A stretch of DNA of 63,324 nucleotides, filler included, from Octopus bimaculoides (Eukaryota): the NCBI RefSeq assembly GCF_001194135.2. It is 4 parts of 4 records of this genome, joined end to end, with 100 filler letters (N's around TTAATTAATTAA, not from the genome) between each part and the next. Parts side by side here need not be neighbours in the genome. Positions count along the whole stretch, not along the records: positions 8,628 to 30,081 come from NC_068988.1; 3 more parts are not named here. One strand, written 5' to 3'. Both the position numbers and the translations under genes were made by a program. Below are positions 10,150 through 13,200 of the stretch, in pieces; positions within the stretch are counted from its first letter, which is position 1, and the number at the start of each line of letters is the position of its first letter. A model generated the notes under the pieces. It had not been told where the DNA came from. It made no database searches and saw only the letters and a list, made by a program, of their open reading frames with translations.

Positions 10150-10266
10150 TCAACCGCTGTCAGAGAATTCTGAGAAGGGTACAATAGCAACACAATCATC
10201 CATACGTGGTGTGTAGCGGGGATTGACATACACGGATATGCGTTTGGTATTTTCTGGCTTCTGGTG
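10150..10266 (-). CDS. ITGB: Integrin beta last exon: [38 protein letters not shown]
   Basis: Acceptor tattttcttttgatAG, phase 0; NPRY sits at the exact offset of the distal NPxY in the canonical last exon GENPIYKSAVTTVVNPKY; TGA at 10150-10152. Confidence 0.85.
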   Translation of the reverse strand, partial: HQKPENTKRISVYVNPRYTPRMDDCVAIVPFSEFSDSG

Positions 10267-13200
10267 CTATCAAAAGAAAAATAGTGTTTGTAAGAAAGAC
10301 ATCGTCAACAGAATGAATTGTAAATCAAATATAAAACATAGGTGCAGGCAAAGCAGTGTGATTAAGAAGTTTACTTCACAAACACGTGGCTCAGTTATAA
10401 TTATGCTTTGAAACATTCATTAGAACTTTAGAATCTCAAAGTGATACACAATTGATCTGAACGAAACAAAGCGACACTGTTTTTGAAATTATAATTGTTT
10501 AAATACTAACAAGCATTCCCTTATTAAGTTTGGCTTTTAAAACTAATTATTCCACTACACCAAGGTCAATTCTGTTTTAAATATCTAGACATATTTCTTA
10601 TTTAAAATTAATTGATTATATTATTAAGGGCAAAAATAATACATTGTGGTATTTGTTCTGACTCATTACGCTTTGAGTTCACATCCAGCCGATGTCAAAA
10701 GTGACTATCATCCTTCCTGAATAGATGAAATAAAGTATCAATTAAATTTTGGTTTCAAATTTTGGCACAAGGCCAGAATATCAGGTAAATATTGATGTCG
10801 ATTTAATTGACTAACCCTCTCCTTTCATCAAATCTCTGACTTTGTAATTATATTAGAAATATTATATTCTCACTTTTTAGTTGCATTCGTTTCATATAAT
10901 TTATTTTGTGTGTTAGGAAACAGATTACTGTTTTTTCAATAGTGTGATGAAAGCCATAATTTATTTAAATAGTTAAATGTATTGTCTCAAAATAATTCCA
11001 GGTAAAACAAATTTCCTTTCTATTGTTACTTTCTTTACAGACACTTTAAAGGAAATATTCAGACATTACAACCAAAGAGAAGTAGTTGATTCAATGTTGC
11101 TTAAATATCGATATATTAACCTACGATGGATGCTTTCTCGTTTCAGTAAGATACTTGTCGTTATAAGACAAGTATGCAATTGTTTATATACAACACTTCT
11201 CTTTGATAGAAGTAAATATATATATATCATATATGCCACAAACACCTAGATCTTAAATAACATACATGAAAGTGGTATTGAGAAAGGGCTGTATCCATCA
11301 ACTTTACTTGCACTCTCAGACCAGTGGAATTGATACGGATATAAGCTGATAATCAATTGTTTAAGTGGAATCAAACCCGGAACTAAATTGTAGCGACCTT
11401 CTTAAACACAGCCATACTTGCACCGACATTTTGAAATTTTTATCAAAGGTATTAATAATAGGAATGAATCACCTGCAACAGAAAATTCAAATAAATGCAT
11501 ATGTGGGTATTTTAGAGAGCCGATGTTCTGGGACGGAAAGACACAGCGTACTACTTACAGCAGTCCCCAGAGGGGACAAAATATGTGTAACAAGTCTAGT
11601 CAATTTGGAGGAGTAAAGCCAATAGTGGTATAGAAGGAATAAATAAAGGGATAAGAAAGTACCTGTGCGATTCAAAAATTATAGAATGTCGATAAAGTAA
11701 TTCGCATCAGTAAGTCAAGTGCCTTTTCTTTGGATTCAGTCTAGAACAATACTCCTTTGTAAGTCTTACTAAAGCTTTGAAGAGAAATGGTTGTTGGAGG
11801 CTGAAGTATTTTCCAGTTGTGAAGGGACAAGCAGTCTTTGTGATGTGGTTTTGACTATGTTTGGCTGTTGCCATTTTGTTTTCAAAAAATAAATTAATCT
11901 TCACTTACCATGGATAGAATAGCATTTGTTATCCTTATGTGTTTGTATGCAATATTATATAAAGCAGCCGGGTACAAACAACGCCATACAAAGATTGTGA
12001 CTACCGCCACAAATAAAATGCCACCTAACACTGCCAATACGATAAAAAGGTGATCCACTTCTGGTAGGCACACTGATTGGAAAAAAACAAGAAAAATTAA
12101 TTCAATTCATAAAGAATAGGAAGCAAATATGTGTATAGAAGCTAAGAATGAGTGATTCTTTTATTCTTGTACTTTTAAAGTTTGTTTTCAGAAAATTAAA
12201 CTGCGACCTTCGATGGTTTTAAAGCAATTATAACAACCACATTGCTTTTCTTTTTGTTTTGTTTTTTTTGTAACGCACAGTGAAACCCAGAAAATATATA
12301 TATGTATGTATGTGTGTGTGTATGTGTGTGCGTGTGTATTGCTGTGTCTTTGAGGATCATTATGCTAATAATAAACAAACGAGACACAATATTGAAACGA
12401 CAGAAAGAAACATTGGGAACTTCGGCATAACAAAATGTTATTTACATTAACAGCTCGGGAATTAATAACAGAACTGAATTGTTCGCAACGCAGAACGACT
12501 CTCCATACACACACACTGCGAAACAGAGACATCGCTTATCAGCACCTTTTCTTAACTATCGACTTGTATTGTTAATTTTTACAACTTACATTGTTTTGGC
12601 TTTTAAAAATGTTAAAAACATTTATAATCAAAAATGTTTCAACAAATGAGTTCACATCAAGAATCTTGCAACCCAAATGCAAAAATTATATATATATATA
12701 TATATATATAAATTAGCAATGCATCCTGGGGTTTCCCGGGTGTTATGACCTACAGCCACATTGTATTATTTGTTCCTTTCATATGGGTGGAATCGGCACA
12801 GCTGATATATAGTGAACTGGGTTCCTGGCGTAATGGAAGCTATTGCTTGTCTAAAAGTGAAGTGGGGTACAATTTGTATAGGTTTGCATGAAAGTGCTTT
12901 CTGTTCTTAAGAAGGATCACAAACTATGTATTGTTTCATCGTATAACGTAGAAAAATTACGAATCTGGGAAATGTATTTTTCTTTTAAAGTTTGATTTTT
13001 CTTAAAGAAACACTTATTGCCCTTTCCATCACCTACTCGCTATCAAAAAGCTAAAACCTCCCAATGTTTCACTTTCACTTGATGTTTCACGCATGCATAG
13101 AATTGTACTGAAATAGCAGGCGTAAAAAATACCAAACCACCACCAGGAAACCCGACATGCTAGAAACAACAGTTTCTGAAGAAACTTCCCCGCTTTCTGA

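What the first reader, a model, noticed from the sequence alone, without database searches (positions are those of the whole stretch)
10150..12072. Integrin beta with a rewired cytoplasmic tail: clasp and talin sites lost, kindlin-type site kept
Seen: the TM and tail exons read ...[27 protein letters not shown] | [38 protein letters not shown]. The intron position and spacing match canonical beta1 ([27 protein letters not shown] | GENPIYKSAVTTVVNPKY, recalled), so residues align almost without gaps. HDRRE is absent, NAKWDT becomes NAILSM, NPIY becomes KPEN, and the distal NPxY survives with Ser at -4. Established: the HDR Asp forms the salt bridge with alpha GFFKR, Trp plus the proximal NPxY bind talin F3, and Ser/Thr plus the distal NxxY bind kindlin (beta3 S752). 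Inference: this intact-looking subunit could not be activated by talin and would signal another way, a non-canonical cephalopod integrin type. Clean splice sites and full ectodomain Cys pairing argue against a pseudogene.
Basis: partly seen in the sequence, partly recalled or inferred. Interest (0 to 1): 0.85.

Follow-up and report, generated by a model that had tools for sequence, protein, structure and literature searches.

The report
Divergent integrin beta with rewired tail
This is the intact 3' half of a gene for an unusual integrin beta subunit whose cytoplasmic tail has lost the conserved clasp and talin-binding motifs; other talin-independent beta subunits are already known, so it is a modest curiosity.

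Summary
On the minus strand, 12072-11909 encodes the transmembrane helix plus [25 protein letters not shown]. After a GT-AG intron, 10266-10150 encodes [38 protein letters not shown] and a stop.

I extended this to ten in-phase GT-AG exons giving a 408-residue C-terminal model. It matches human integrin beta-1 at E = 2e-61, colinearly down to NPKY. HDRRE, the Trp and the proximal NPxY are absent. One distal YVNPRY sits at the canonical offset.

No alternative canonical exon exists in the piece. Pfam's integrin beta cytoplasmic model does not match.

New here: 41 of 43 conserved cysteines are kept. The two lost ones align to beta-3 C523 and C544, which are disulfide partners. Replacing that pair makes alphaIIb-beta3 constitutively active.

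The likeliest reading is a functional, divergent paralogue. I infer that it rests in an active state, does not depend on talin, and couples through its single NPxY.

Talin independence, expression, conservation and the cephalopod origin are all untested, because no orthologue was reachable. Precedents (human beta-4 and beta-8, oyster Cg-beta3) lower the novelty.

Interest 0.3.

The parts
27829..27880 (-). Exon encoding (x)[17 protein letters not shown], the end of the hybrid domain. It is the first recognisable exon in the piece.
   Evidence: AG/GT sites and in-phase joining. It aligns to beta-1 'RKCSNISIGDEV'.
27334..27492 (-). Exon covering the end of the hybrid domain and the start of I-EGF1 (VKFELSV...[11 protein letters not shown]).
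   Evidence: tblastn to P0001-P0003; splice sites.
26567..26706 (-). Exon for I-EGF1 and part of I-EGF2 ([21 protein letters not shown]...).
   Evidence: Pfam I-EGF_1 at 2.1e-8.
24495..24646 (-). Exon for I-EGF2 and part of I-EGF3. It contains Tyr153 (24540-24538, TAT) in place of the Cys that aligns to beta-3 C523.
22180..22289 (-). Exon for I-EGF3. It contains Arg176 (22266-22264, CGT) in place of the Cys that aligns to beta-3 C544.
21980..22072 (-). Exon for I-EGF4 ([31 protein letters not shown]).
   Evidence: Found by tblastn; splice sites read; phase 0 at both ends.
20624..20750 (-). Exon for the first half of the beta-tail domain ([15 protein letters not shown]...AEIVDEVK).
14080..14193 (-). 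Exon for the second half of the beta-tail domain ([38 protein letters not shown]).
   Evidence: Found with a Cys-spacing pattern. Splice sites and phases fit both neighbouring exons. It aligns to beta-1 'CKEKDVDDCWFYFTY'.
11909..12072 (-). Exon for the TM helix (12052-11984) plus the membrane-proximal tail [25 protein letters not shown] (11983-11909). There is no HDRRE and no Trp, and only 3 of 25 residues are charged.
   Evidence: AF2 on the single sequence predicts one continuous helix (weak evidence).
10267..11908 (-). Intron of 1642 nt, phase 0, at the position of the conserved 'KWDT|G' intron of canonical beta genes.
   Evidence: It contains no NPx[YF] or canonical tail peptide.
10150..10266 (-). 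Last coding exon. KPEN (10260-10249) replaces the proximal NPxY. It also carries KRIS (10245-10234), YVNPRY (10230-10213), a 20-residue acidic and Ser-rich extension (10212-10153), and TGA (10152-10150).
9900..9962 (-). Two AATAAA signals about 190-250 nt after the stop codon, consistent with a terminal exon and 3' UTR.
   Evidence: Sequence read.

Best explanation
The interval holds the last two coding exons of a real, intact-looking, multi-exon gene for a divergent integrin beta subunit. The stalk (I-EGF1-4 and the beta-tail domain) and the TM helix are conventional. The 63-residue cytoplasmic tail occupies the same exons, the same intron position and almost the same length as canonical tails. 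Its sequence has been replaced, apart from one distal YxNPxY.

Proposed mechanism (inferred, not shown):
- The subunit pairs with an alpha chain, but two restraints that keep canonical integrins 'off' are absent. One is the inner-membrane clasp (no HDRRE Asp). The other is the I-EGF3 disulfide equivalent to beta-3 C523-C544.
- The heterodimer therefore rests in, or easily reaches, the active state. It does not depend on talin-driven inside-out activation, since it lacks the charged membrane-proximal helix, the Trp and the proximal NPxY.
- Its cytoplasmic coupling runs through the single YVNPRY, which could bind kindlin or another PTB or FERM-F3 adaptor such as the Dab2/Numb type. Phosphorylation of the KRIS serine may regulate this.
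- A YKHI (YxxPhi-type) motif and the 20-residue acidic C-terminal extension may also contribute.

Functionally this resembles vertebrate beta-8, but the gene is not a beta-8 orthologue.
For: Gene reality:
- Ten exons all have GT-AG sites and mutually consistent phases, giving 408 codons without a stop. The chance of this at the intron stop-codon frequency is about 4e-12.
- Integrin EGF Pfam families match.
- Human beta-1 matches at E = 2.3e-61 over model residues 7-388, and beta-3 at 5.5e-58.
- AATAAA signals follow the stop.

Colinear tail:
- HMMER aligns the tail to beta-1 through NPKY with one gap.
- The intron lies at the KWDT|G position seen in five invertebrate beta proteins.
- The NPRY Tyr is at residue 18 of the last exon, as in beta-1 and P0004.

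Loss of canonical motifs:
- No HDRRE-, KWDT- or FAKFE-like peptide occurs in any minus-strand frame of 8628-20624, and only one NPx[YF] occurs in 8628-14080.
- PF08725 gives no match even at E <= 10.
- The proximal segment has 3 charged residues of 25, against 12-13 of 26 in canonical tails.

Coordinated Cys loss:
- 41 of 43 conserved Cys columns are kept. The two lost (Y153, R176) align to beta-3 C523 and C544.
- The chance that two random losses hit partners is about 0.024.
- PMC12383024 states that C523-C544 is the first disulfide of EGF3, and that replacing the pair with Ser makes alphaIIb-beta3 constitutively active.

Precedent and established knowledge:
- Human beta-4 and beta-8 tails lack the motifs and do not recruit talin (PMC6450878).
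- Oyster Cg-beta3 lacks NPxY/F (PMC7390872).
- Talin binds the proximal helix plus the proximal NxxY/F, and kindlin binds the distal NxxY/F (PMC4325847).
Against: - There is no expression evidence and no orthologue, so selection on the tail is not demonstrated.
- The tail exons alone are open frames of a length that is not rare by chance.
- The N-terminal half of the gene (PSI, beta-I with MIDAS, most of the hybrid domain) lies outside the piece and could be damaged.
- Each Cys loss is one transition away from a Cys codon (TAT, CGT). They could be recent, polymorphic or sequencing errors.
- The C523/C544 double mutant had no effect in alphaV-beta3, so the effect depends on context.
- Talin F3 might bind the remaining NPRY.
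- YxxPhi and KRxS are short motifs with high chance frequencies.
- The AF2 helix prediction is from a single sequence and is weak.
Confidence: 0.55

Rival explanations
1. It is a functional divergent beta subunit that is still talin-regulated. Talin, together with kindlin, uses the surviving YVNPRY and the helical membrane-proximal segment, and a co-evolved alpha tail supplies a different clasp. On this reading the tail has diverged in sequence but not in function.
For: - The length, intron position and NPxY offset are all preserved, which suggests a conserved spatial requirement.
- W-R at the membrane border and small residues in the TM helix (Ala at -7 and Gly-Gly at -11/-12 from the Trp) are kept.
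- The proximal segment is predicted to be helical.
- From memory, talin F3 is known to bind some non-canonical peptides.
Against: - Every residue class reported as important for talin F3 is changed: the Asp of HDR, the two Phe of the proximal helix, and the Trp with NPxY.
- The remaining NPxY sits at the distal, kindlin-type position.
- Human tails that lack these motifs do not recruit talin (PMC6450878).
Confidence: 0.25
2. It is an unprocessed pseudogene or a decaying duplicate. The tail has drifted, and the open frames are residual.
For: - The tail bears almost no sequence similarity to a region that is nearly invariant across animals.
- The two tail exons alone could be open by chance (0.045 and 0.11).
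- Two conserved Cys are lost.
- The introns carry transposon remnants.
- No matching protein was found in the large collections.
Against: - Drift long enough to erase the tail should also have broken the other 340 codons. Instead there are ten exons, no stop or frameshift, all splice sites intact, and 41 of 43 Cys kept.
- The two lost Cys are partners of one disulfide.
- The collections searched appear to lack this animal's proteome altogether, so absence there carries no information.
Confidence: 0.08
3. A canonical TM and tail exist as alternative exons that are not visible here, either in the 465-N gap at 13205-13669 or beyond the piece edge at 8628. The exons seen would then be a minor isoform.
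For: - From memory, vertebrate beta-1, beta-3 and beta-5 have alternative tail exons.
- An assembly gap lies in the intron just upstream of the TM exon.
Against: - Known beta isoforms share the TM and membrane-proximal exon, and here that exon itself lacks HDRRE and the Trp.
- No canonical peptide occurs in any frame of 8628-20624.
- Polyadenylation signals follow the stop.
Confidence: 0.04

Closest known systems
Human integrin beta-1 (solved structure 7nwl_B), the canonical talin- and kindlin-regulated beta subunit
   Same: It is the best solved-structure match, at E = 2.3e-61 over model residues 7-388. It shares I-EGF1-4, the Cys framework of the beta-tail domain, the TM helix ending in W-K/R, the intron after the membrane-proximal segment, and a distal NPxY at the same offset.
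   Different: HDRRE, the FAKFE helix, the Trp and the proximal NPIY are all replaced. The proximal segment is one residue shorter and nearly uncharged. There is a 20-residue extension after the distal NPxY where beta-1 has 3 residues. The I-EGF3 C1-C5 disulfide is absent.
Vertebrate integrin beta-8 (and beta-4): beta subunits that do not recruit talin
   Same: The cytoplasmic tail lacks the talin motifs. PMC6450878 reports that beta-4 and beta-8 are the only human beta tails that lack the motifs and fail to recruit talin. This is the closest functional analogy.
   Different: This gene is not a beta-8 orthologue. The beta-8 chains score far lower (E = 7e-27, covering only model residues 8-271) than beta-1 and beta-3. 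From memory, the beta-8 tail is not colinear with canonical tails and has no NPxY, whereas this tail keeps the exon structure, the length and one NPxY.
Crassostrea gigas Cg-beta3
   Same: It is a mollusc integrin beta paralogue reported to lack the conserved C-terminal NPxY/F motif, while Cg-beta1 and Cg-beta2 keep it (PMC7390872).
   Different: This gene still has one NPxY. Orthology is untested.
Drosophila integrin beta-nu
   Same: It is a divergent invertebrate beta paralogue that exists alongside a canonical beta-PS type.
   Different: Beta-nu keeps both the proximal and the distal NPxY/F motifs (PMC6450878). This gene keeps only the distal one.
Engineered beta-3 mutants: C523S/C544S, and Asp723 clasp mutants
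   Same: This protein naturally lacks the equivalents of both features: Y153 and R176 in place of C523 and C544, and no HDR Asp. The double Cys mutant makes alphaIIb-beta3 constitutively active (PMC12383024). From memory, the Asp723 charge reversal does the same.
   Different: Those are point mutants in an otherwise canonical subunit. The Cys mutant had no effect in alphaV-beta3, so the outcome depends on the alpha partner.

Membership tests
Integrin beta subunit | Four tandem integrin-type EGF domains with the CxCxxCxC framework | tested here: met
   Pfam EGF_integrin at 3e-14, I-EGF_1 at 2.1e-8, EGF_2 at 1.9e-5. The model aligns to beta-1 and beta-3 across I-EGF1-4. One disulfide pair in I-EGF3 is missing.
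Integrin beta subunit | Beta-tail domain between I-EGF4 and the membrane | tested here: inconclusive
   All Cys of this region align with canonical relatives and with beta-1 and beta-3. However, Pfam PF07965 gave no match at E <= 10.
Integrin beta subunit | Single TM helix ending in Trp followed by Lys or Arg | tested here: met
   [24 protein letters not shown], 23 uncharged residues with mean Kyte-Doolittle hydropathy 2.6. It aligns to the TM of beta-1 and beta-3.
Integrin beta subunit | Beta-I (von Willebrand A-like) domain with MIDAS, ADMIDAS and SyMBS, plus the PSI and hybrid domains | not testable with these tools
   These exons lie beyond the piece edge at 30081. Nothing integrin-like was found in 27881-30081.
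Integrin beta subunit | Conserved cytoplasmic domain (Pfam Integrin_b_cyt, PF08725) | tested here: not met
   No match even at E <= 10, for either the whole model or the TM plus tail alone. PF08725 is recorded for P0002-P0006.
Canonical talin-activated beta tail (beta-1/2/3/5/6/7, beta-PS type) | Membrane-proximal HDR(R/K)E, whose Asp forms the clasp with the alpha GFFKR Arg | tested here: not met
   The segment reads [15 protein letters not shown], with no Asp or Glu anywhere in the 25 proximal residues. No HDRRE-like peptide occurs in any frame.
Canonical talin-activated beta tail (beta-1/2/3/5/6/7, beta-PS type) | Trp followed by the membrane-proximal NPxY/F (the talin F3 site) | tested here: not met
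   NAKWDT|GENPIY in beta-1 aligns to NAILSM|HQKPEN here. Actual talin binding was not tested.
Canonical talin-activated beta tail (beta-1/2/3/5/6/7, beta-PS type) | Membrane-distal NxxY/F preceded by Ser or Thr (the kindlin site) | tested here: met
   ISVYVNPRY has its Tyr at the same offset as beta-1 TTVVNPKY, with Ser at -4 from the Asn. Only one of the two hydroxyl residues is kept, and 20 residues follow the motif instead of 3. Kindlin binding was not tested.
Vertebrate integrin beta-8 orthologue | Closest sequence similarity to beta-8 over the ectodomain and tail | tested here: not met
   Beta-8 chains score E = 7e-27 and cover only model residues 8-271, against E = 2e-61 for beta-1.
Pseudogene | Stops, frameshifts or broken splice sites in exons that are otherwise recognisable | tested here: not met
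   None was found in the ten exons present. The upstream exons could not be examined.

The most novel reading that the evidence does not exclude
This is a naturally 'unlocked' integrin beta subunit. It has lost three things together: the inner-membrane clasp, the talin site, and the activation-restraining I-EGF3 disulfide (the beta-3 C523-C544 equivalent). It keeps a single PTB-type NPxY. If so, it would be an invertebrate lineage that converged on a beta-8-like, talin-independent, constitutively extended integrin by modifying a canonical tail in place rather than replacing it.
Probability: 0.3. Interest if true: 0.5.

Novelty: new variant of a known kind. Interest (0 to 1): 0.3.

Why it matters
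Talin binding to the beta tail is conserved from protists to humans (PMC6450878). Natural beta subunits that have dropped it therefore show which parts of integrin regulation can be dispensed with.

This gene removes, in one protein, two restraints known from beta-3 mutagenesis: the clasp Asp and the C523-C544 disulfide. It does so while preserving tail length, exon structure and one NPxY. That makes it a ready-made natural experiment for talin-independent integrin function.

It is only a sequence-level inference in one paralogue of one invertebrate genome. Analogous cases are already known (beta-4, beta-8, oyster Cg-beta3), so the gain would be incremental.

Tried and rejected
1. Word-indexed protein search with a 320-residue spliced model. 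It returned only six hits, the best 36% identical, all canonical invertebrate beta proteins. There was no self hit and no orthologue, so the collection seems to lack this animal's proteome.
2. Exhaustive representative search. The TM exon alone returned two weak hits. The one that could be aligned is a repeat protein (FYPAAFYGVAFDHLPITN, four copies) and is irrelevant. This says nothing about conservation.
3. Scan of metagenome contigs for related loci. It found nothing.
4. Search for alternative canonical exons by tblastn with canonical tails and by motif scan of all frames. None was found.
5. Search for upstream exons in 27881-30081. None was recognisable, so the gene continues beyond the piece.
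6. Literature on cephalopod integrin beta tails. Nothing specific turned up.
7. A paper stating the generic C1-C5 nomenclature for I-EGF domains. None was found. A review naming the beta-3 C523-C544 bond was used instead.
8. AF2 on the TM exon. It predicts one continuous helix. This is a single-sequence prediction and I treat it as weak.
9. Pfam on the retrotransposon-like fragments downstream. There was no match.
10. I considered and rejected calling the gene a beta-8 or beta-nu relative.
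Full report
**Observation**

The gene lies on the minus strand.
- After the acceptor ...ccaatcag, exon 12072-11909 encodes (V)[54 protein letters not shown], followed by the donor gtaagtga.
- After the acceptor ...tttgatag, exon 10266-10150 encodes [38 protein letters not shown] and TGA.
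- The other two frames of the TM exon are closed.
- Two AATAAA signals lie about 190-250 nt past the stop.

**Gene model**

Open minus-strand stretches, tblastn with relatives, a Cys-spacing scan and direct reading of the junctions give ten exons:
- 27880-27829
- 27492-27334
- 26706-26567
- 24646-24495
- 22289-22180
- 22072-21980
- 20750-20624
- 14193-14080
- 12072-11909
- 10266-10150

All have AG/GT borders and mutually consistent phases. Together they give a 408-residue product without a stop. At the stop-codon frequency of the introns (0.062 per codon), 408 open codons have a chance of about 4e-12. The two tail exons alone are much less remarkable, with empirical frequencies of 0.045 and 0.11.

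Nothing integrin-like is visible in 27881-30081. The PSI domain, the beta-I domain and most of the hybrid domain therefore lie beyond the piece.

**Identity**

- Pfam finds the integrin EGF families: EGF_integrin at 3e-14 and I-EGF_1 at 2e-8.
- Against solved structures the best matches are human integrin beta-1 (7nwl_B, E = 2.3e-61, model residues 7-388) and beta-3 (E = 5.5e-58). Beta-8 is far weaker, at 7e-27, and covers only the stalk.
- In the large protein collection the nearest sequences are canonical invertebrate beta subunits at no more than 36% identity.

So this is a deeply divergent beta paralogue. It is not a beta-8 orthologue.

**The tail compared with canonical tails**

- HMMER carries the beta-1 alignment through the TM and the tail to NPKY with one single-residue gap.
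- Five invertebrate beta proteins were gene-called straight into their introns. All read KWDT or CWDS followed by 'V', which is a GT donor. The phase-0 intron after the membrane-proximal segment is therefore conserved, and it is the intron found here at 11908-10267.
- P0004 reads through a short in-frame intron into GENPIYKQATSTFKNPTYSGGR. Its distal Tyr is residue 18 after the junction, exactly as in [18 protein letters not shown].
- Within this frame HDRRE, the FAKFE helix and the Trp are gone. NPIY is replaced by KPEN.
- The proximal 25 residues carry 3 charges, against 12-13 of 26 in canonical tails.
- PF08725 (Integrin_b_cyt) is not matched even at E <= 10.
- The surviving YVNPRY has Ser at -4 from the Asn. 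It is followed by 20 more residues where canonical tails have about 3.
- NPRY is the only NPx[YF] in any frame of 8628-14080. No HDRRE-, KWDT- or FAKFE-like peptide occurs in any minus-strand frame of 8628-20624. An alternative canonical exon is therefore excluded within the piece, except inside the N gap at 13205-13669.

**Cysteines**

Aligned with six relatives, 41 of 43 conserved Cys columns are kept. The two exceptions are Tyr153 (TAT, 24540-24538; CEC has become CEY) and Arg176 (CGT, 22266-22264; CxC has become CKR).

In the HMMER alignment to beta-3 in mature numbering (8t2u_B), these fall on C523 and C544 (I counted residues from 475 to 573). A 2025 review states that C523-C544 is the first disulfide of EGF3. 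It also states that replacing the pair with Ser makes alphaIIb-beta3 constitutively active, though not alphaV-beta3 (PMC12383024).

Two random Cys losses would hit partners with a probability of about 0.024. The ectodomain is thus not fully paired in the canonical sense. It has lost one complete pair cleanly, which argues for a folded, selected protein. The lost pair is also a restraint on activation.

**Mechanism**

The steps below are marked as shown, established or inferred.

- Shown: an intact C-terminal half of an integrin beta gene; a colinear tail without the clasp and talin motifs; one distal NPxY; and loss of one I-EGF3 disulfide pair.
- Established knowledge: talin binds the proximal helix plus the proximal NxxY/F, and kindlin binds the distal NxxY/F (PMC4325847). 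Talin recruitment through NPxY/F is conserved back to Capsaspora, and of the human tails only beta-4 and beta-8 lack it (PMC6450878).
- Inferred: the heterodimer lacks both the cytoplasmic and the stalk restraint and is active by default. It is not switched by talin. It couples through YVNPRY to kindlin or to another PTB-type adaptor; from memory, [FY]xNPxY is the LDL-receptor-type motif.
- More speculative still: KRIS (a basophilic-kinase consensus on the -4 Ser), YKHI (YxxPhi, also ITIM-like as IAYKHI) and the acidic C-terminal extension may be regulatory features. These are short motifs with high chance frequencies.
- AF2 on the TM exon predicts one continuous helix through the proximal segment. 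This is a single-sequence prediction and is weak evidence.

**Rivals**

- A still talin-regulated tail, diverged in sequence only: 0.25.
- Pseudogene: 0.08. Drift strong enough to erase the tail should also have broken the other roughly 340 codons.
- Hidden alternative exons: 0.04. Known isoforms share the TM and proximal exon, and here that exon is itself non-canonical.

**What could not be done**

- No orthologue or transcript was reachable, so conservation, expression and the cephalopod origin remain untested.
- The literature searches found no description of such a tail in cephalopods.
- They did find a mollusc precedent: oyster Cg-beta3 lacks NPxY/F (PMC7390872).
- Drosophila beta-nu, by contrast, keeps both motifs.

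**Verdict**

This is a new variant of a known kind: a divergent integrin beta subunit, functionally closest to the talin-independent beta-8. The coordinated loss of the C523-C544-equivalent disulfide is an added, coherent clue. Interest is modest (0.3), because precedents exist and every functional statement is inference.

Noticed in passing
window 14667-15169, + strand: Two overlapping ORFs encode the N-terminal HTH region of a Tc1/mariner-type transposase (Pfam HTH_23 at 6e-7; HTH_Tnp_Tc3_2 at 6.5e-9). They are frameshifted relative to each other, so this is a dead DNA transposon inside the 6.4-kb intron between exons 20750-20624 and 14193-14080.
   Followed up: yes
window ~8900-9640, - strand: Stop-ridden ORF fragments downstream of the gene (for example ...EIKEYICLGQTVNIRRDMDAEISK..., ...QRAMERSVLGTSLKEYIRNEIIRKRSGLNDV...) resemble, from memory, the C-terminal part of a non-LTR retrotransposon reverse transcriptase. 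Pfam gave no match.
   Followed up: partly
window 24538-24540 and 22264-22266, - strand: The two lost conserved cysteines are TAT (Tyr) and CGT (Arg), each a single transition away from a Cys codon (TGT). Both partners of the beta-3 C523-C544-equivalent disulfide are affected. It is worth checking in other individuals and species whether the change is fixed.
   Followed up: partly
window ~28830-29000 and ~28120-28290, - strand: Two copies of a roughly 170-nt interspersed repeat lie in the sequence upstream of the first recognisable exon. Their translations both read ...QKTQG...DN..SE...AGLV.ACI**IK*DNKAKA... This looks SINE-like.
   Followed up: no
window 13205-13669, 16161-16170, 21249-21379 (N gaps) and their flanks; also 29700-29850 and 14300-14520: All three assembly gaps are flanked by (CA/TG)n microsatellites. 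Long (TATC/GATA)-type tetranucleotide arrays (translated as 'LSIYLSIY') occur twice. These repeat-rich, AT-rich (about 34% GC) introns are typical of a large invertebrate genome.
   Followed up: no
window 11897-11908, - strand: Read-through of the 11909 donor would add only VSED before a stop. Intron retention would therefore give a tail truncated just after the membrane-proximal segment, analogous in form to the read-through isoforms of vertebrate beta subunits.
   Followed up: no
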